A stretch of 64,000 nucleotides of DNA from assembly GCA_951804945.1 (NCBI GenBank), contig OX638152.1, positions 46,500,001-46,564,000 on the forward strand. The letters run 5' to 3'. The stretch comes from Podarcis cretensis. Its lineage: Eukaryota. The translations under genes were made by a program, and so were the position numbers. How positions within the stretch are numbered: position 1 is the stretch's first letter; each line of letters begins with the position of its first letter. Below, piece by piece: positions 43,429 through 64,000 of this stretch. The notes under the pieces are model-generated. The model saw only the letters and a list, made by a program, of their open reading frames with translations, made no database searches and had not been told where the DNA came from.

Positions 43429-43713
43429 TTAAGGACAAAGCAATCTCAGATGAGAATTCAAAGTCTGAGATCATCCTTGATTATAATAAAACTAAAGATT
43501 TTTTGATCACCTGTGACCAGATGGTTTCTACATACCTGATCAAACAGTGGCCACTTATGGGTGGTTGTTGTTCTCCCCCCAGGTATAATTGCCTGCTTTT
43601 TTAAGAAGCTGAACATAGCCAGCTTTCCAAGGATGTCAAGAGCCACAGCCTCAGGTCTGTTAAAGCCTAAAGCCCACCACAGCAGACACCAAGAAAAGGA
43701 ACAGGTTTCATAT

Positions 43714-47569: not shown

Positions 47570-47836
<267 letters not shown>

Positions 47837-49107
47837 TAATCTGAAGTATTTGTTATTTAATTGAATTTATAACGTGATAGCAAGCATTGGCCTTACTCAG
47901 AAGAGACCCATATCTTTCATTGGGTCTATTTTGAGTATGATTTAGTTGGATATCACACACAGTCTCTGTCAGATACAGAATGGTTAACAATAAATGAAAA
48001 ACCAAATTAATAACTATCCTGTGAGATTTGATACAGCTTTTAAAACTTTACATTTTTAAAACTTCTTGAAAAATGCTTTCATGTATTAGGTGGTTGTGGG
48101 ATTTTTATTACTACATAACAATTCTGAAGAATGTACCCTGCCTATCCTAATTTCAGCACACAGTGTAATTTATAGAAGGTTCTTTTAAATAATTGGACAG
48201 GCTGTGATGGCATGGATGAGAGAAGACATCTTATAGGTATCTTTAAATCTAGAGTTAATAAATGTATAGGTCAATCTTTATAGCAACTTTATTTCTGCCT
48301 GTAAGGCAGTGCTGATCACCTCACGCGTTTCAAAAGATGCTTCTGTTTTAGCTGAAGCTTTTAGAAAGTCATCAAGTGCTGCATGTTGAAGATATTATTG
48401 GCCTCAACATTGTGAAGCAGAATGACAGTTAAAATTGATGAAATAGGTCAGAGTCTTCTCACTGAATGGAAGTCCTCAAAATATTCCTGGGTGCCACTGC
48501 TATGTGAAGAGTCAGATGATGCAATGTACTTAGTTTTCCAAACCTCACTGGACGTTTAAACCAGGCAAGCTTGGATTCTCTTAATGACAGGTGTACTCAT
48601 TTGTTAAGAATATGGAATCTACCAGCATTACTTGTGTTGTATTAATTTGGTATCTAGAAGTTTGTGCAAAACCAGTCCTCAGCCCAGGGCCACACAGGGC
48701 CAACAATATTATCTCTGAGAAGTAATGAAATGGGTGCATTTACCTTAATGATGAGATGGATTTCCATGTGTCGGTACCATAGCTAATGGTGAAAACCAGA
48801 TCAGCAAGAGCCTATACTTCAGGTCTCCAACCTAGCACCTGTAGGTGGACACCTTGTATGCCTGCCAGAGTCTTCTCTGTCACCAACAAGAGGACCTGAA
48901 CCCACTGAAACAAAAACTGGAAGTCTGGAGATGGTTTTATTGTTCTTGTTCTCAGAGCAGTTCCTCTTCAGTCACTCTACAATGTTTAGTTCCTCTGCAC
49001 AATTTCTCTTCTCAACCCTATCTGAAGAAGAGGAGGCAGTAAGCTACAGAAAATGGGCTTGCTAGAGACAGAAAAATAGGAGATGGATGAAAGTACAGGT
49101 GGAGAAA

Positions 49108-49362
49108 AGAAGCCAGTGTGGTGTAGTGGTTAAGAGCGGTAGTCTCCTAATCTGGGGAACCGGGTTCGCGTCTCCGCTCCTCCACATGCAGCTGCTGGGT
49201 GACCTTGGGCCAGTCACACTTCTGTGAAGTCTCTCAGCCCCACTCACCTCACAGAGTGTTTGTTGTAGGGGAAGAAGGGAAAGGAGATTGTTAGCTGCTT
49301 TGAGACGCCTGAAGGGGAGTGAAAGGCGGGATATCAAATCCAAACTCTTCTTCTTCTTCTTC
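49108..49362 (+). mobile_element. tRNA-derived Squam3-like SINE (L2-type tail, (CTT)n end)
   Basis: A box TGGTGTAGTGG, B-box-like GGGTTCGCGTCTCC, core gctgggtgaccttgggccagtcac, tail aaggcgggatatcaaat + (ctt)n. Confidence 0.85.
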
Positions 49363-50244
49363 AGTGCCACCATGATACAAAAATATGTATCCAATATGTA
49401 TCCTCATGATTTTTACAAGGGATGCATCCCAGCCATCATCAATGGATTGCACTGTAAAAACCACCTATATAGCACATGCCAGAGATACTATGGCATATGG
49501 ATTCACTCCACAATCCATGTTTTGTGACAAGTGCTGCTTCTGCGATTTGGAAACAGATGCAATTTGACGGTGGCTTGGGGGAAATCCTGTCTAAAGATCA
49601 TGCAAACACAAGAGGAACCATTTTAAAATCTTCTTTCTCCACTATTCCCTTTTTCATGCCCCACAGCAGCCATTTTGTGACTGGTATGCACAACCTTTTT
49701 TCAGAGTGCTACATGTGCCCAAAGAGCTCAAAATGTTGACAACCCCTGGACTAGAGGTGCAGTCGCAACCAAGGATGCCTGAAGATGCAATGTGACCACT
49801 TTGTTAAACAGAGATAGGCAGTAATTACTGATTTTTTTTCATGTAGTTTGGTTTTTAGAGCAGAGGTCAATCAGCCACAGATCGGAAGCTGTTTAACACC
49901 TTGCCTTTTTGAATACTTAATATCCTCATCCACCAAATGATCCAGATCCTTCTTATTAATGTTTAAAAGGTTTTATTCGCACTGTCTGGTAGCCACTGGA
50001 CACAACAAAGTAATGGCCTTGTTCAGCGTGCTTACGGTCTACAGATCTTTCAGTAGTCAAAGTTCTGAACATGGTCATTAAATGAAGGTAACATTTTTAA
50101 ACAACTTTAGCAAAAGTAGTGTGGGTTTGAACACTTAAGAAACTCAGTGTCTCTTAGCACGCAGAGTCTTGAAAACAGGAAGATCCAAAAAAATAGAAGT
50201 AATAACTAGTGGCATCATTGTGGTCCAATAAATAACACATGCAG

Positions 50245-50369
50245 GAACAAGGGTTGTGAGGAAGTCCAAAGATGAATATGAAATGTGGATTTTGGAAAAG
50301 ATTGTGTTATTATCTATGTATTTTATTGTTAAACTAAAATTTAATAAATATTATAAAAAAATAAAATAA
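50245..50369 (+). mobile_element. Severely 5'-truncated L1-like insertion with A-rich tail
   Basis: Perfect 18-bp direct repeat aataaataacacatgcag at 50227-50244 and 50370-50387; AATAAA and A-rich end. Confidence 0.8.
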
Positions 50370-52290
50370 AATAAATAACACATGCAGACAAAATGAAGCT
50401 GGGACTGAAATTACAGTAACTTGTGTCTGTTAATACACCTCTGGGAAAGTTAAGTGAAAGCCTTTGTGCTGTTTTAACCAGTTTTCTTTTAGCTTTACTA
50501 ATTGCATGGTGCCATGCCATCTCTTATAAACATTTCTAATAGACTAATACTGTTGGATATAAAAGAAGCTAAATCCACAGCATGGAATGTTAAAAAATCT
50601 GATATTTTGTTGTTTTATGCTGTTTTCAGTCTTGTGTGTCTTACAATGTCTGTAATGACTCCGCAATTTTTTATTAACTTTCAGAATGAATTCATTAGTA
50701 AAGGTTCACCAAAACAAGGTTATTAAACACACTTGAAGGGAAACATCATCTTCAAGGAAATGTAAATCATTTAAAAATAATAATCTGTCAATATACAGAG
50801 CATGAAGTCAGACATGTCACCATAAAAGCTGAGGATCAGTGAACTTCATTAATTCATTTCCCCCCTTTTTGAGCATCTAACTTGAGGCTTTGACAACTGT
50901 TAAAATATTTCTGTATTCACACATACATACATATTGCATTAGCGCCAGTGGGCACAATAAGCAATTTTATCAACTAAGCTTTGATAATTAAGTTTTTGTG
51001 TGAGATATGAAGATTTCACTTAGATTGACTTTTGTTTATTTTCTTACAGAACAAAATTATATTGAGTATTTAGTTCACAGAAAAATAATGACAAGAACCT
51101 TTCATCTTTTTCTATTTCTTTGTTGTTGCAAATTGATGTAGAGCTGATGTAGTCATTCACAAGCAACGCTGTTTTAAAATGCACTACTTTGTGTGTTTGG
51201 TGGAAATCCTTATTACTGTGGCTCTGTATTTCCTTTCTTAATGATACTAAATTCCATTGACTATCTGAAAAGAACCAGCAGAAAGAGATCGCAATAGGAT
51301 CCCTGTGATAAAAATAGCACTGCTGCAAATGAAGGCCAGTGCTTAAATTGTTTGGATTTTTCTTTCCTTTTTTCTCCAGCACAATATTCCTAGAAATAAA
51401 GTGACCTGATAAGAACAGCGACACATATGCAGCGTGTTCTAAATTAGGCTTTTCTATGTCCTTAAAGACTTAAGGACCCTAGATCCTAATATAAAAAAAC
51501 CAGATCTATAGGAAGAAAAAAGGGGAGAAAAAGGCTGTTGATGTGTCTATATCTCAGCCATTCCATCATCCCTTTGTGGTCCGCCTGCTAACCTAAATTT
51601 CAAGGCCAAAACACATTTAGAAACGATTGTGAAGCTTTTCTTGCATTTCATTGTTTTGCTCAGAATTAAGGAGCATTTCATGGCTTCCTTCTTCCCATTA
51701 GCAGTACAGAAAATATATTCTATTGTTCAAAGAAGAGAGAAGTGTGTGCTGGGGGGGAGGGGGGACTGAGTAGATGTTGCACTGGAGGTCTGCTGTTTGA
51801 TTAGAGGCCTTATTGATTAAATTAAGATCTATAGGGGCTGTGAAAATGAAGATTTTTCCCCTGTGAGAATTATTATATTCTGAAACTTTTTATTTAAACT
51901 CATAGGCTCGTGAGTCAGGAAAGATTACTACAGCAGGTAATCTACAGGGCAGATTAATATTAATAGGTTAAAATAACAAAAGCATCTCAAAAACTGAAGA
52001 ATAAAAAAATCCTAGTTATTGTGTGTTCTATATTCATTACAGTTAGTTTTTTTAAAAGGCTGTGATATTGAGCAGCTGTTACAATAAAGCACAACACACT
52101 TTTAAGGTGCAAGTAATGGAAAATTAGCACATTTTCATAATACTTTGTTACTCCTAGAAATAGCTTACTCTTTGCTTAAATGCTTAAGTGTCCTTATTGA
52201 TCCACTTTACCAAGCATTTGCATGATACAGTGAATATAAGAGTCTAGCAATATCTTGATGATACTGGAGAAAAGTAACCATTACTCTTCT

Positions 52291-52296
<6 letters not shown>

Positions 52297-52330
<34 letters not shown>
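52297..52330. repeat. (AT)n microsatellite
   Basis: Direct reading. Confidence 0.97.
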
Positions 52331-52333
<3 letters not shown>

Positions 52334-52646
52334 TAAATAGTGTAGGGTTTTTGTTTGTACATGGATTTGCAGCAAAACATAAAGCAGTAAAAAGAAGGTC
52401 ATTTAGAGGCTAAACCACACTCTATTTCCCTCAAGAGCACACTATACTAGAATGTTATTCTTCTTCTGTGGAGACAAGTCACCTTTTTAAATAACAAATT
52501 TTGTTTTATTCACATATTGGTATGTCTTGGACATATTTACTCTTACTTTTATGTTCTGTTCTTGCCCTGATTTATACTAATGTTGTGTGGTCTCTTTTTC
52601 TTTCTTCAGCTTAATAACCAATTTTTATTGTGTTTTGATTTTTCAG

Positions 52647-52673
52647 TCCCGTCTTTTACCTTCACACCAACAG
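52647..52673 (+). CDS. ROBO1: ROBO1 27-nt cassette microexon (VPSFTFTPT), phase 1-1
   Basis: tttcag|TCCCGTCTTTTACCTTCACACCAACAG|gtatat; peptide matches the ROBO1 juxtamembrane segment. Confidence 0.94.
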
Positions 52674-53515
52674 GTATATATTTGCACTTTTCCCTTGTCT
52701 GATTGGCATGTGCCTGTGTGATACTGTGTCACTGTCTCTTTTTCTTCTTCCCTCATATAACCAGGCACAATATTACACAGCGAGTAGTATGAGTAGTATT
52801 CGTTACGTATCCTTATTGTTAGTATCATTTTACCAATTTGGCAGATCTCACACTGCTGTCCTAAGTTTGAGTTTTATATCCATTGGAAGACTACATGAGA
52901 TCCTATCATCTTCTATGCTAATGTATAGCATGGTTGGGTGGTTTTTGCTTTTTTGTTTTTGCTAATTTTGTATATTGTATAGTTGTTCATAATGTTCTGC
53001 TCTACCAAAATGCGCCGTAGCCACACAAAGGACTCTGCATAAAGGCAAGCAGCATTCCCTTCCAATGATTCTTAATGGAACATTACTTAACACTTAAATA
53101 GAAAGACATACAAAGGATTTCATTTTTATAAACCGGGAGATGTCTATATGTGTTGTATCCAACTTACAGTAAGACTTCGATCATCAGAACAATAGATTGG
53201 AAAGCTCTATGCTTTAGGACATGCCATTAATAGAAGATGCCATTAACGTGAAAGCAATGCACACATGCTGTTGAGTGTAGCCTGGAATTCTGTGTGAACC
53301 TTAACATTATAATAATAATTATACCCTATACCATACAGATCTGAAAGCATGAGAATGAAATGCTTGTCAGTTACTCTTGGTTATTGAAAAGAATACCAAA
53401 AATAGACAAAGGGTTACATTAAAGGAAGTTTTACCAGTAACACAATGACTTTCCCTCGCTCTCCTTTCCCCAGTGCCACCCCCTAATCTGTTCTGTGTTC
53501 CCACCAATCCTCCAG

Positions 53516-53629
53516 AGCAAATTCGGGGGGCGGACAATGAGGAGATGAAGTCCTGCTGCATTGGTGGAACACCTTGCCTTAACAGGATAGCTTTGTTATC
53601 TAGAACCCCAATAATCAATGTTAAATACG
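53516..53629 (+). CDS. Candidate additional in-frame ROBO1 cassette exon (EQIRGADNEEMKSCCIGGTPCLNRIALLSRTPIINVKY), 114 nt, phase 1-1
   Basis: CCTAAT branch point, pyrimidine tract, tccag|AG acceptor, TACG|gtaaat donor; 38 codons with no stop in the required frame; no transcript evidence available. Confidence 0.55.
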
Positions 53630-54757
53630 GTAAATGCCAAACTCCCATTTAAACATTGTTCTGTCAGCACATTTCTGCCGAAGATAGTATGTACTCAAAT
53701 TGTTTTGTGAATAAACACATTTCAATAATATTGCTGATGGAGAGAGAAAATTACTTCATATTCTCAAAAAAGAATGAATTCCTTCATGTTTATAAAAATC
53801 TTCTGTAATTCTAATAAGCTGTTATTTCAACTTTTAAAATAGTTTTTGTCCTTGTTTCTCATTCACTTTTAACATATATTAATATGGAATCTGCTTCAGC
53901 ATTAGTTTAAACATTCAGATATTTTCCTCATACAGAATCCATGTTTTTAACAACTGGGCTGTACAGAGAAAATAATTTATGTACATTATTAGTGTTGCTA
54001 AGTTAATTTGCAAGCTTAAATTTAAGCATGTTTATGCTTGGTGTCAGATTTCTCACAGGAGCCAAGTTTTTAGAACTGTGAAGACAAAAATATTTTAATC
54101 AATACTTGGCACAATACATGATAGCTGTACAATAGACAACAGGGAAATTTGACAAGGAGTCATTTGAAATGCGGACTGTATTTAAAATTTAAAACTTTTC
54201 TGTTCCATAATTCAGAATCCAACTACTTTAGTTCCACTGAATTTAAATGGTAACAACCCCTCATCTTTAGCAACACTTTCAGCAAAAGGCCTATGTACCA
54301 TTGGCTGCTACATTTTAATCCTGTTATTGTAATCGCTGCAAGCGGTTATCTCTGCCTTGCAGAACCCCACTTTGGAGTTCTTCTAACAAGCAGAATTTGG
54401 CTGCCTTTTAAAACACATTCCTAGTTTGGGAAATGCATAGCTATGGAATCCATCGCCACTTGCACTGAGGTTAATCTTCTTAACTCTTTGCTTAACCTGG
54501 GGGTGGTAGCTGAAGTACAGCAAGTGTATTTGGGTCTGGGCATGTTTAAAACACATTTTCAGGCGCGAGTCTTTATGACATACTTCCCAAAATATAAATA
54601 TATTTGGAAACACCTATCTGTTGTGTTTTACATTCCATTTTGTAAACAACAGCACACACATCAGAAAATACTGCTTCTGAGCAATATCTATTTTATGTTT
54701 TGAAAAATAAACAACTAAAACTCCAGTGGCTTTTAGGTGGCAGTATGGTTGTATAGA

Positions 54758-55120
54758 GGGACGCGGGTGGCGCTGTGGGTAAAAGCCTCAGCGCCTAGGG
54801 CTTGCCGATCGAAAGGTCGGCGGTTCGAATCCCCGCGGCGGGGTGCGCTCCCGCTGCTCGGTCCCAGCGCCTGCCAACCTAGCAGTTCAAAAGCACCCTC
54901 GGGTGCAAGTAGATAAATAGGGACCGCTTTCTAGCGGGAAGGTAAATGGCGTTTCCGTGTGCAGCTCTGGCTTGCCAGAGCAGCTTTGTCACGCTGGCCA
55001 CGTGACCCGGAAGTGTCTCCGGACAGCGCTGGCCCCTGGCCTCTTGAGTGAGATGGGCGCACAACCCCAGAGTCTGGCAAGACTGGCCCGTACGGGCAGG
55101 GGTACCTTTACCTTTACCTT
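54758..55120 (+). mobile_element. Full-length Sauria SINE
   Basis: Starts GGGACGCGGGTGGCGCTG, B box GGTTCGAATCC, (ACCTTT)3 tail; perfect TSD tatggttgtatagag at 54744-54758 and 55121-55135. Confidence 0.95.
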
Positions 55121-55276
55121 TATGGTTGTATAGAGTTGGTAGTAGGAACTGCTTATACCGACAGTAATCTAGCCACAAGGAAATAAATACATTTTAGCAT
55201 TTTTCTTTCTAGGATCCAACAGAAGCACATTCAGAGAATTAACTTAACTACTCTATATTTTCATTTTATATTTTAG

Positions 55277-55319
55277 TAACCTATCAAAGAGGAGGTGAAG
55301 CTGTAAGCAGTGGAGGCAG
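55277..55319 (+). CDS. ROBO1: ROBO1 exon (VTYQRGGEAVSSGGR), 43 nt, phase 1-2
   Basis: ttttag|TA acceptor, GCAG|gtaaga donor. Confidence 0.95.
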
Positions 55320-55783
55320 GTAAGACTGTATACAGGTTTCCTACATATAATGCAAAATGCAGACTGAACTGTAGGATATGTTGGGTAAAGCTGCATCTCT
55401 GAATGCAAACAGCAGAGGGAGCACTTTGACTTCAAACTAAAACTCTTGCTGCTATAAGGGGATGATTAAAGGGAGCTAAAGTAGCTAAATTGTGGCATTT
55501 AAGGAGATTAAACACTTAGTAATGATAGCAAAGAGAAAAACCTTAAATTGGAAACCATGCTTAAAGAAAGCTGCCTCTTAGGTGATTTTTAAAAACAGAA
55601 AACAGAAACGGAATAGTGATCATTACTGGTTGGGAATTGCAAATTAAAAGTACAGATAAATCCGGGTTCTGAGAAATGAATGCAATTCCATCTTTAGACT
55701 ATAGCTAAGTCTTTAGTTAATTGGTCAATGGGGAATGATTCTCTTCTCAAACAAATGACAGTGTTTCATTAATACTGACGTCA

Positions 55784-55936
55784 CTGCAATTCTACCTGGA
55801 TGGCGTTGGGTGGCAGCAAGGTCAGGTGTGTGTGGACACATCAGCAGAGCCAGTTGCGCACTCACACTGGTGTGTCTGCATGGCCCTGACTTCACTGCCA
55901 TCTTGTGTCACCCCAGTGCTGTCCAGGCAACTGCAG
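55784..55936 (+). repeat. Imperfect 153-bp palindrome (hairpin)
   Basis: 55811-55844 pairs with 55867-55900; 55795-55810 pairs with 55912-55927. Confidence 0.85.
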
Positions 55937-57815
55937 CAACTCCCCAGCGCAGCAGCTGCTTCTTAACAAGGATTTCAGCCAACCAAGGTGCCTCTAAAAC
56001 AAAGCTATACGGAGGTATACAATCACTGTCATGTCAAATACAAGTCAGGCTATACAGATGATGGTGCAGAGCCAAAATGATGCATAGCAACTGCAGTCAA
56101 GCCACCCACAAAGAAAGAAAAGTTATGAAAAGTTATGTCACACAAAATGCTAAGATTAGCAAATAGGTCAAACAGTGGCTTCTGCTTCTTTTCCAAATGA
56201 GGTTTTTTTTTTAAAAAGGTGTTTAATGTATCGTGTGTGTGAACAAGGAACCGATTTATGCAGAGCTCTGAAACTGGCACCCGTGGCCACTTTCTGGGCT
56301 ATGCAGTACCTGTCCCTGTACTCAAACTGGCCTGATTCACACATAATAACAAACCATGTTTACTTACTATATGAATGTGCCTTGGGATTATGTTCTTGCT
56401 TCCTTGTACACCCTCCCTCCATGCCATGTCTTGCAGGACACTGGATTGTGACAAAAAATCCCCAAACATTTGGATTAATTGGGGTGGGCACGTTCCCTAA
56501 AATGAGGTCTGCTGCTTTTAAAAAACATGGCTAGCTAAAATCATTTTAGGAAGGATGGATGCCTGATGCAGGGGGCGGAGTGGAAATCTTAAATAGTTTT
56601 TTTTAAAAAAATAAAAATAAAGAAAGAGGGAAGCACAGTAGACAACACTTTTAAAAGGGCAAAAGGGAGTGAAATGTAAGTTTTCCCCTTCCCACAGCTG
56701 AGTTGTTACAGCTCCCCTACCCACTTTTTAACCTCCTACAAACTAGTTTTTTGCCGTAGTTTTCAGGACAAGCACAAACCATTGTATGCCTGTTCAGTAC
56801 AACACCAAATTGTGATTTCTCCACAAACTACAAAGGGCAGCTTTCACAGCATATGAAGAGAAGAGAGGAAGGGGTGAACAAGCCCTAAGTCCACTCCAGG
56901 CTTCTGCACATGTTACCAAAACATTTTGATGTTGCATCTGAATAGAGCTATTCTGAGTTATTGCTGTTGATCCAGATGAATATGAGTTCCACCCAAGTTA
57001 AGGCAAGACAGTTAAAAAGGGAACATTCTGCACCACCTTTTAGGTATGCCCTCAGCTGTACAAAGGGAATAGAGCTGGAGATGCCATGCTTACATAAAAT
57101 ACAGTATTTTCTTAGCAGCTGTTTTTTTCTGATCAAATTGGTATTTTTCCAAGTAATCCATTCAGAAAGCATTTGTAACTATTAGTTGATTCCAGTTCAC
57201 TGAGCATAATGTACTTTGCATAATGAGAAACACTTTTGCTTAGTATTTATAGTTGTTTTTTTAACGTTCTCTGTAACTTTAATTTCCAAGAATTTCAACT
57301 AAGCTGGAAATGTGGGGAAATGTGGCCTGTATCCAAAGAACTGCAGGAGTTTTTCTGCATACCAAAGAGAGCTTTGGCCATGTGTCAAAGAGCAGTCCCC
57401 TATGCTGCATGGCCCACCTAATATGAAATTGAGGAAAGTTTCACAAATAGGTCATATGGCGTGTCTGTTATAAACATTGTAGGAAAGAAAGGGAGGATAG
57501 TGTTGTGCTTGCACTCTGAAATAAAATATGTGTGTGTGATTATTTGGAGATCAAACATGTTGTTAATGACAAAATTGTTAGGAGTGGTTTATTTTAAAGG
57601 AGTAACATGCATGTTGTCAGCGGTCCAATCATAAACCCAACTACTTTATGTTGGTGCAATGGAGATTACTATGAAAGGCAGGAATGGAATGTCACCATGA
57701 ATTTAATAGTGGGTAACAAAGAAGGTCCTAGAAAATGTCCACAGATCTCTGTATATAAGAAAGGCTTTTAATGCTATCTTGGGAGCATTAAGGGAAGGAG
57801 TGGGAAACACTGATA

Positions 57816-58588: not shown

Positions 58589-58768
<180 letters not shown>

Positions 58769-59652
58769 TAACTTAATTTGAACTTAATTTGTATTGTTTC
58801 CTGTTTATTTGTTTACTTCCTATTTGTTTATTGCTGTCTATATCATCTGGGCATGTTACTGCTCAAAGTTATCCTATTGCCATTACGTATGCTACTGTAC
58901 CCACACATTTAGAGCCTTTTGAGAGAGTTCCTGCCTCCTGTCCAAGTACAGCTTCTTTGGGTGCTTAATCCCCTCGTCATTGTTTCTAGATTATATTAAT
59001 CCTTATCCAACATCCTGTAGAATATATAAAGTGGCAGCAGGTGTCCCAACATATTCCTGCATCTTTCGGGGAGATGGCTCACAAACTAATCCATTTTATG
59101 CCTCATTCCTTCTCTTTTATGATCTGTTACCCACAGCATTGTCTCACCCATATTCCACTCCCAGGCACAAACTTGTGTCTATAAAGATTCCAGGAGAACT
59201 AGTCACTTCTGCTTTTTGTACTCACAAACACATAGTTTTATTTATGGAATTAAATGTTGTATGACTCATAAGCAAGCTAGTACAACTTTCTCTGGAATGT
59301 ACAGTGAAGTGCTGCAGGTGGGTATTCAGGTACCAATGCTACTTAGTTAAGAACAGTATTTAGCTATAAATTTAAGATCAATTCTGCCATCAAGGGCCTT
59401 GCAGAAGGAGATTACCTGTGTAAAAAGAGAAATGGAGGCAGAAGAGTTGGGGACTCCTATATGAAGGGTACACCTTATAGTTTTGGACCTATGGAACTAA
59501 GCTGCAATTTTACTATAGCTAACATTCTGATTTAGCTTCTGTTCATCTAACTATTTCTGCTTCAGAAAGCCAAATCACGTAGGCCAAAAAGCACCTAAAA
59601 ATAGTCTTCTAACTGAACACAATTTTCCCTTTTCCTTTCCTGCTGTGGTTAG

Positions 59653-59988
59653 CTGATTGTATAGCAAATTACAACAATCAGCTGGAGAACAAGCAAACAA
59701 ACCTGATGCTGCCTGAGTCAACAGTTTATGGTGATGTGGACTTAAGCAACAAAATCAATGAAATGAAAACTTTCAACAGCCCAAATCTAAAAGATGGAAG
59801 ATATGTCAGCCAACCAGGTCAGCCTACACCTTATGCCACCACTCAGCTCATCCAGTCAAACATCAGCAATAATGTTAACAGTGGCAGTGGTGATTCAAAT
59901 GAAAAACACTGGAAGCCATCTGCACAGCAGAAACAAGAGGTTGCGCCAGTTCAGTACAACATTATGGAACAAAACAAATTAAACAAAG
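59653..59988 (+). CDS. ROBO1: ROBO1 exon with CC0 ([10 protein letters not shown]) and CC1 (PTPYATTQL) motifs, 336 nt, phase 1-1
   Basis: ggttag|CT acceptor, AAAG|gtaaat donor; ORF 59706-60086. Confidence 0.96.
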
Positions 59989-61830: not shown

Positions 61831-61935
61831 ACTACCGATCAAATGATAATGTTCCAACCATCCCATACAACCAAGCCTACGATCAGAATACAGGAGGGTC
61901 CTACAACAGTTCAGATCGAGGAAGCAGTACATCTG
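61831..61935 (+). CDS. ROBO1: ROBO1 exon ([35 protein letters not shown]), 105 nt, phase 1-1
   Basis: ttgcag|AC acceptor, TCTG|gtgagt donor; ORF 61797-62057. Confidence 0.96.
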
Positions 61936-62802: not shown

Positions 62803-63623
62803 GACCGTCTAGAGGGGCTGGGAGCTGGAGGCACTGTTATATAGTGGTTCTGTTCCTTCCTCCTGGGCCGTGTTCAGAAAGTGGTGGGGGGGATGAGTGT
62901 TCAGACCCCTGGGCTCTCCCCTGGGTTTTGTCCTCTCCCCCATGCTTTTCAACATCTACATGCAGCCGCTTGGAGAGATCATCAGGAGTTTGGGCTGGGT
63001 GTTCATCAGTATGCAGATGATACCCAGAGGGATCATTAGGAGGTTTGGGGTGGGTGTTCATCAGTATACATATGATACCCAGCTCTACCTCTCTTTCACA
63101 TCAGAACCAGTGAAGGCACTCACACAGCTCCTGTGTGAGTGTCTGGAGGCAGTTGGAGGGTGGATGGCGGCTAACAGATTGAGGTTGAATCCTGACAAGA
63201 CAGAAGCACTGTTCTGGGGGGACAGGAGGTGGGCAGATGTGGAGGACTCTCTGGTCCTGAATGGGGTAACTGTGCCCCTGAAGGACCATGGGCGGAGCCT
63301 GGGAGTCATTTTGGACTCGCAGTTGCCCATGGAGGCGCAGGTCAATTCTGTGTCCAGGGCAGCTGTTTACCAGCTCCATCTGGTACTCAGGCTGAGACCC
63401 TATCTGCCCGTGGACTGTCTCGCCAGAGTAGTACATGCTCTAGTAATCGCTTGCTTGGACTACTGCAATGTGCTCTATGTGGGGCTACCTTTGAAGGTGA
63501 CCCAGAAACTACAACTAATCCAGCATGCGGCAGCTGGACTGGTGACTGGGAGCGACCGCCGAGACCTACATTGGCTCCCAGTACGTTTCCGAGCACAATT
63601 CAAAGTGTTGGTGCTGACCTTTA
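62803..63623 (+). mobile_element. L2-clade LINE ORF2 reverse-transcriptase fragment (defective)
   Basis: LSPMLFNIYM.PLG, YADD/YTYDTQLY, WMAANRLRLNPDKTE, LDYCN..Y.GLP, LHWLPVRFRAQFK; frameshifts, deletions and an internal duplication. Confidence 0.92.
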
Positions 63624-64000
63624 ATTTTTTTTTTTTTTTTATAATAATTTTTATTAATTTCCACACATATAATAAAGAACAATTTAAAACAGTATCACAT
63701 CATACTCATCGGTTCTTACCCTTCTTTCTTTGACTTCCCCATACCTCCCCATCCCTGCATCCTTGTTTAATAATTCTTTAGCAACCCTTAAGTCCATTGT
63801 CTTAGTTCCCTTTCGTAAAAGTTTCTTAAGTTTTTTTGTTTACTGCTGCAATTCTTTACTTCTTACCCCCTGACATCCTAACATTCCTCAATTTTACAAT
63901 TATTTTTAAGATATATTTTGAAGTTCTTCCAGTCCTCTTCCATTGTCTCTTTCCCCTGGTCCCGGATTCTGCCCGTCATCTCGGCCAGTCCCATAAAGTC
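63624..64000 (-). mobile_element. L1-type LINE 3' end (ORF2 C-terminus, 3' UTR, poly-A), continuing beyond the window
   Basis: Poly-T at about 63625-63640; reverse strand 64000-63878 reads DFMGLAEMTGRIRDQGKETMEEDWKNFKIYLKNNCKIEEC-stop. Confidence 0.8.

What the first reader, a model, noticed from the sequence alone, without database searches (positions are those of the whole stretch)
53455..53635. Candidate unannotated in-frame 114-nt Cys-containing cassette exon in the ROBO1 juxtamembrane tail
Seen: between the 27-nt exon and the 43-nt exon is a complete exon architecture. It has a CCTAAT branch point (53482-53487), a pyrimidine tract, tccag|AG at 53515/53516 and TACG|gtaaat at 53629/53630. 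The length is exactly 38 codons, phase 1-1 as this intron requires, with no stop. It would give ...TFTPT-EQIRGADNEEMKSCCIGGTPCLNRIALLSRTPIINVKY-VTYQRGG.... The segment is GC/CpG-richer than its AT-rich surroundings and resembles no repeat I recognise. Knowledge: canonical ROBO1 as I recall joins TFTPT directly to VTYQRGG. Inference: a regulated insert that places a CC pair plus a third Cys near the membrane (possible palmitoylation) and lengthens the spacer between the TM helix and CC0.
Basis: partly seen in the sequence, partly recalled or inferred. Interest (0 to 1): 0.8.

Follow-up and report, generated by a model that had tools for sequence, protein, structure and literature searches.

The report
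Unproven splice-ready pseudo-exon in lizard ROBO1
An intron of a lizard's ROBO1 axon-guidance receptor gene holds a stretch that looks like an in-frame extra exon, but it has no relatives, no coding signature and no RNA support, so it is most likely a silent or rarely used pseudo-exon.

Summary
There is an AG at 53514-15 and a 114-nt stretch (53516-53629) that is open in phase 1. TACG|gtaaat follows, and CCTAAT lies 29 nt upstream.

At those site strengths the architecture is about what chance gives: roughly 0.8 such frame-open pseudo-exons are expected in this 7.5-kb interval.

A much stronger acceptor lies 42 nt upstream (ttccccag|TG, exon start 53474). It gives a 156-nt exon that is also in frame, and that combination is rarer (about 0.05-0.1 expected).

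Nothing else supports a coding exon:
- Codon usage and GC by codon position look intronic, below all 14 real ROBO1 exons in the window.
- The peptide has no hit among 1.84 billion representative proteins, short-ORF searches on both strands, Pfam, PDB or metagenome contigs.
- No run on record as RNA holds it.

The decisive tests could not be run. 

The cysteines would sit about 41-55 residues from the membrane, so they are not juxtamembrane.

Verdict: most likely a pseudo-exon (about 0.55). A real lizard-specific cassette exon remains possible (about 0.2).

The parts
53516..53629 (+).
   Evidence: Acceptor PWM 5.6 bits and donor 5.8 bits.
53474..53629 (+). Longer 156-nt version using a much stronger upstream acceptor (ctcctttccccag|TG). 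It is also phase 1-1 and open, and adds VPPPNLFCVPTNPP before EQIRG...
   Evidence: The acceptor scores 12.1 bits, the 99.7th percentile of all AGs in the window.
53482..53487 (+). CCTAAT, a possible branch point for the 53516 acceptor. The branch A is 29 nt upstream of the AG. The motif lies inside the 156-nt version.
   Evidence: No AG lies between it and 53514.
53630..53635 (+). Candidate donor gtaaat, the same hexamer as the real donor at 58746
53650..53652 (+). Stop codon reached 7 codons after the donor if the donor is not used (...NVKYGKCQTPI*). AATAAA follows at 53710-53715.
   Evidence: Read directly from the sequence.
53367..53648 (-). 93-aa ORF on the opposite strand covering the whole candidate. 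It has no relatives.
47619..47816 (+). ROBO1 transmembrane exon, ending ...STYAGIRK + G (phase 1)
52647..52673 (+). 27-nt ROBO1 microexon.
55277..55319 (+). 43-nt ROBO1 exon (V)TYQRGGEAVSSGG(R)
58591..58745 (+). Next ROBO1 exon (PGLLNINEP...TTYSRP). It holds the constitutive CC pair.

Best explanation
The segment is a splice-competent pseudo-exon in the ROBO1 intron between the 27-nt microexon and the 43-nt exon. It is a C-rich tract with two in-frame AGs (exon starts 53474 and 53516), followed 114-156 nt later by a moderate GT donor. The frame happens to be open. It is not an old, selected coding exon. Shown here: the sequence anatomy, the chance rates, the intron-like coding statistics and the lack of relatives. 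Inferred: that it is not appreciably used.
For:
- Codon-usage log-likelihood is -0.08 to -0.09 bit per codon. The 14 real ROBO1 exons score 0.02-0.53 (mean 0.25, leave-one-out). Open intronic stretches average -0.185 with sd 0.17, and 28% of them score at least as high as the candidate.
- GC at codon positions 1/2/3 is flat (0.45/0.49/0.47). In the real exons it is 0.53/0.47/0.35.
- The opposite strand is open too.
- phmmer of the peptide against 1.84 billion representatives gave 0 hits.
- No short ORF relatives on either strand, none in metagenome contigs, none in Pfam or PDB.
- No similarity to the downstream CC-containing exon, so it is not an exon duplicate.
- No listed holder of the exon's words is on record as RNA.
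- No paper found describes an insert at this junction.
Against: - With the 53474 acceptor the site pair is unusually good. Only 5 pairs on the + strand reach the same summed score (2 of them, 43583-43654 and 59165-59317, match no exon I mapped in the window; the two in the unmapped first 20 kb may be real exons) and none on the minus strand, so about 0.05-0.1 are expected in this interval and phase.
- Of the three such pairs that lie in the mapped part and match no mapped exon (this candidate plus those 2), this is the only one open in the phase its intron requires.
- Local GC is exon-like.
- The exon's words are held by several small runs (80-153 Mb) of a related organism. That could mean a captured or conserved locus, or RNA.
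- The splice-site matrices were approximations written from memory, not MaxEntScan.
- No read-level or orthologue-level test was possible.
Confidence: 0.55

Rival explanations
1. It is a genuine alternative cassette exon of ROBO1, specific to lizards or squamates. It is 156 nt from the 53474 acceptor, or 114 nt from 53516 as a tandem alternative. It inserts 52 or 38 residues between ...TFTPT and VTYQRGG..., which lengthens the linker between the TM helix and CC0.
For: - Complete architecture: a very strong acceptor, plausible branch points, and a donor identical to that of a real neighbouring exon.
- Length is 3n and the frame is open in the required phase.
- The combination is rare on the control strand.
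- GC is raised, as in exons.
- This part of ROBO1 already has a 27-nt alternative microexon (established knowledge).
- Other notes on this genome report real unannotated exons. Those are leads only.
Against: - No coding signature.
- No protein relative, not even among 1.84 billion representatives.
- No run on record as RNA holds it.
Confidence: 0.2
2. It is a conserved non-coding intronic element, for example a splicing-regulatory or enhancer block serving the neighbouring microexons. Its open frame and AG/GT are incidental.
For: - A GC-richer island of about 200 nt sits in AT-rich intron.
- Both strands are free of stops.
- The same partial share of words (0.63) appears in five small runs from two studies of a related organism. 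That pattern fits target capture or reduced-representation loci.
- A CU-rich tract sits upstream, of the kind bound by PTB-type factors. This last point is inference.
Against: - No cross-species alignment could be made, so conservation is untested.
- No RBFOX (TGCATG) site lies within 500 nt, and YCAY density is unremarkable.
- No Rfam match.
Confidence: 0.15
3. It is a composite terminal exon. The 53474 or 53516 acceptor is used, the donor is ignored, translation stops at 53650, and the message is cleaved after the AATAAA at 53710-53715. The product would be a truncated ROBO1 with ectodomain and TM helix but no CC0-CC3 motifs.
For: The stop codon lies 7 codons past the donor, and an AATAAA lies 60 nt further on. 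Intronic polyadenylation that truncates receptors is a known mechanism (general knowledge).
Against: AATAAA is expected about once per 1.2 kb in this AT-rich DNA, so it is close to a chance find. There is no read evidence.
Confidence: 0.05

Closest known systems
Intronic pseudo-exons (cryptic exons) of vertebrate genes
   Same: AG and GT sites of realistic strength at exon-like spacing inside an intron. Composition is intron-like, and there are no relatives.
   Different: This one is frame-preserving, has no stop, and has an acceptor in the top 0.3% of AGs in the window.
The 27-nt juxtamembrane microexon of ROBO1 (VPSFTFTPT), a known alternative exon in the same part of the gene
   Same: Same phase (1-1), same linker between the TM helix and CC0, and in frame.
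   Different: The microexon is conserved across vertebrates (established knowledge). The candidate has no detectable relative and no coding signature.
Conserved 9-nt e6b microexon of Robo1/Robo2 (Johnson, Junge and Chen 2019; recalled from memory, not read here)
   Same: Regulated in-frame insert in a Robo receptor.
   Different: It lies in the ectodomain, is deeply conserved and is NOVA-regulated. None of these properties was shown for the candidate.
Juxtamembrane S-palmitoylation motifs of single-pass receptors
   Same: A CC pair plus a third Cys on the cytoplasmic side.
   Different: The first Cys would lie 41 residues after the TM helix with the 114-nt form, 55 with the 156-nt form, or 32 if the 27-nt exon is skipped. 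Such sites usually lie within about 10 residues (general knowledge). ROBO1 already has a constitutive CC pair further downstream.

Membership tests
Functional alternative cassette exon of ROBO1 | AG acceptor with pyrimidine tract and branch point, plus a GT donor | tested here: met
   Acceptor at 53516 scores 5.6 bits, acceptor at 53474 scores 12.1 bits, donor scores 5.8 bits.
Functional alternative cassette exon of ROBO1 | Length is 3n and the frame is open in the phase of the host intron | tested here: met
   Both the 114-nt and the 156-nt forms qualify.
Functional alternative cassette exon of ROBO1 | Junction-spanning RNA reads | not testable with these tools
No holder on record as RNA.
Functional alternative cassette exon of ROBO1 | Splice sites and frame conserved in orthologous introns | not testable with these tools
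Protein-level searches found no relatives.
Functional alternative cassette exon of ROBO1 | Coding signature (codon usage, GC by codon position) like the gene's other exons | tested here: not met
   The candidate scores below all 14 real exons and sits inside the intronic null.
Juxtamembrane palmitoylation site | Cysteine(s) close to the cytoplasmic end of the TM helix | tested here: not met
   By counting, the first Cys is 41 (114-nt form) or 55 (156-nt form) residues after ...SIWLY.
Recursive-splice (RS) exon of long neuronal genes | Acceptor AG immediately followed by GT, regenerating a donor | tested here: not met
   The junctions read ccccag|TGCC and ctccag|AGCA.
Exonised transposable element | Other copies of the sequence, or terminal repeats or target-site duplications around it | tested here: inconclusive
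   No other copy in the 64-kb window. No convincing flanking repeats. No genome-wide repeat library was available.
Tandem exon duplicate of the downstream CC-containing exon | Significant similarity to exon 58591-58745 | tested here: not met
   Local score 29, and 28 of 300 shuffles reach it.

The most novel reading that the evidence does not exclude
Wall-lizard-type ROBO1 carries a real, regulated, lineage-specific cassette exon (156 nt from 53474, or 114 nt from 53516). It inserts a 52- or 38-residue Cys-containing segment between the TM helix and CC0, creating a receptor isoform unknown in other vertebrates.
Probability: 0.15. Interest if true: 0.45.

Novelty: not a real feature. Interest (0 to 1): 0.15.

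Why it matters
If the exon were real, it would add a lineage-specific isoform of a major axon-guidance receptor, in the linker that positions the CC0-CC3 signalling motifs. It would also show how a new coding exon arises next to a conserved microexon. As it stands it mainly illustrates a caution: a full exon architecture with an open frame is expected about once by chance in an intron of this size. Splice-site strength, coding statistics and read evidence have to be weighed before calling a new exon.

Tried and rejected
- Read evidence. One run search found the exon's words only in DNA-like or unlabelled runs of three coded organisms. Local scripts did read the whole window file for splice-site statistics, and one search printed the splice-site context of that exon on the closed machine only.
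- Orthologous DNA.
- Relatives of the peptide. All searches were blank: 1.84 billion representatives, short ORFs on the + strand and the - strand, metagenome contigs (a first try failed because the query was too short), Pfam and PDB.
For that reason full-length annotated isoforms could not be screened for the insert.
- Rejected: small RNA (Rfam), exon duplication, a repeat within the window, a recursive splice site.
- Literature. Three searches and two papers were read in part. None describes an insert at this junction.

Full report
**What is in the sequence**

The window holds the middle of a ROBO1 gene on the + strand.
- The transmembrane exon ends at 47816, reading ...[40 protein letters not shown] plus one base.
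- A 27-nt exon lies at 52647-52673.
- A 43-nt exon lies at 55277-55319 and reads (V)TYQRGGEAVSSGG.
- The next exons are 58591-58745, about 59655-59988 and 61831-61935.

In phase 1 the stretch reads QIRGADNEEMKSCCIGGTPCLNRIALLSRTPIINVKY without a stop. That canonical ROBO1 joins TFTPT directly to VTYQRGG is my recollection as well. It could not be checked here.

**Is it more than chance?**

I scored splice sites with simple position matrices written from memory (approximations, not MaxEntScan).
These are similar to the real neighbouring exons.
- Pairs at least that good, 30-300 nt apart, 3n long and open, occur 9-13 times per phase on the + strand and 5-9 times on the minus strand of the window. 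That gives about 0.8 expected in the 7.5-kb interval 47817-55276 in the required phase.
- The minus strand carries a 93-aa ORF across the same place, so the open frame is weak evidence.
- GC is raised (0.47 against 0.30-0.37). CpG observed/expected (0.54, three CpGs) lies within the range of neighbouring windows.

Forty-two bases upstream, ctcctttccccag|TG (exon start 53474) scores 12.1 bits. That is the 99.7th percentile of all AGs in the window, against the 92nd percentile for 53516. It is also in frame and open, and gives a 156-nt exon that adds VPPPNLFCVPTNPP before EQIRG.
- Pairs with the same summed score number five on the + strand. Two of them (43583-43654 and 59165-59317) match no exon I mapped, and neither is open in the phase of its own intron. 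Two others lie in the unmapped first 20 kb and may be real exons. There are none on the minus strand.
- That puts the chance expectation for this interval and phase near 0.05-0.1.
- If anything is spliced here, the 53474 acceptor should dominate.

**Coding signature**

I built a codon-usage model from 14 real ROBO1 exons of the window (758 codons) against intronic trinucleotides.
- The candidate scores -0.08 bit per codon (156 nt) and -0.09 (114 nt).
- The real exons, scored leave-one-out, give 0.02 to 0.53 (mean 0.25).
- Open intronic stretches of the same length give -0.185 with sd 0.17, and 28% of them score at least as high as the candidate (earlier versions had a frame slip in one training exon).
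- GC at codon positions 1/2/3 is flat (0.45/0.49/0.47), against 0.53/0.47/0.35 in the real exons.

The candidate therefore looks like intron, not like an old coding exon. A newly recruited exon would look the same.

**Relatives**

All of the following were blank:
- phmmer of the 37-residue peptide against 1.84 billion representative proteins gave no hit at E<=0.001.
- The word-indexed search found no candidate for the 67-residue open stretch and none for the minus-strand ORF. These searches see only proteins of similar length.
- A metagenome scan found nothing.
- Pfam and PDB gave nothing.
- The peptide is not significantly similar to the downstream exon that carries ROBO1's constitutive CC pair.
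- There is no second copy in the window, no clear flanking repeats and no Rfam match.

Full-length annotated ROBO1 isoforms could not be screened. So 'already annotated in lizard gene models' is not excluded.

**RNA and other genomes**

The run search found the exon's sampled words in 12 runs from four studies. These were small runs (80-153 Mb) of organism A and 1.3-1.6-Gb runs of organisms B and C. Five of the organism-A runs hold an identical share of 0.63, a sixth holds 0.25, and the B and C runs hold 1.00. None is on record as RNA. The identical partial share in small runs fits capture or reduced-representation DNA as well as it fits RNA.

I took no contig for human.

**Function as proposed**

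By counting residues, the first Cys of the insert would be the 41st after the TM helix. That is 18 residues of the TM exon tail, 9 of the microexon, and 14 of the insert. With the stronger acceptor it would be the 55th. This is not juxtamembrane in the sense of known palmitoylation sites. The literature searches found no description of an insert at this junction.

**Verdict**

Its best-supported reading is a splice-competent pseudo-exon (confidence about 0.55). The rivals are:
- a real lizard-specific cassette exon, about 0.2;
- an incidental open frame in a conserved non-coding block, about 0.15;
- a composite terminal exon using the stop at 53650 and the AATAAA at 53710, about 0.05.

Earlier notes on this genome say it is a lizard of wall-lizard type and that other hidden exons there proved real. 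I used them only for the organism's identity.

Noticed in passing
window 43583-43654 and 59165-59317 (+): Two other strong AG..GT pairs with open 3n stretches on the gene strand (72 nt, acceptor 14.2 and donor 6.3 bits; 153 nt, acceptor 10.3 and donor 11.3 bits). Neither is open in the phase of its host intron, so inclusion would bring in a stop: they are possible poison exons or just pseudo-exons.
   Followed up: partly
It could hide the 53516 acceptor in a hairpin, or it could be chance.
   Followed up: no
window 54700-55100 and 55750-56000: Two blocks of 56-61% GC sit in an otherwise AT-rich intron, the first just upstream of the 43-nt exon. I suspect transposable-element insertions, but ARAGORN and Rfam found nothing.
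   Followed up: partly
window 62897-63730 (+): A 278-codon open stretch with a partial reverse-transcriptase domain (Pfam RVT_1, E 2.6e-08): a LINE fragment in the ROBO1 intron.
   Followed up: partly
window 53650-53715 (+): If the candidate donor is ignored, the frame stops at 53650 and an AATAAA follows at 53710-53715. On paper this is a truncated, tail-less ROBO1. The signal is expected by chance about once per 1.2 kb.
   Followed up: no
(runs X1-X6): Five small runs (125-153 Mb) from two studies of a related organism hold exactly the same 0.63 share of the exon's sampled words, and a sixth (X6, 80 Mb) holds 0.25. That suggests the locus is a fixed target of a capture or reduced-representation design. 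An EcoRI site lies at 53775-53780.
   Followed up: no
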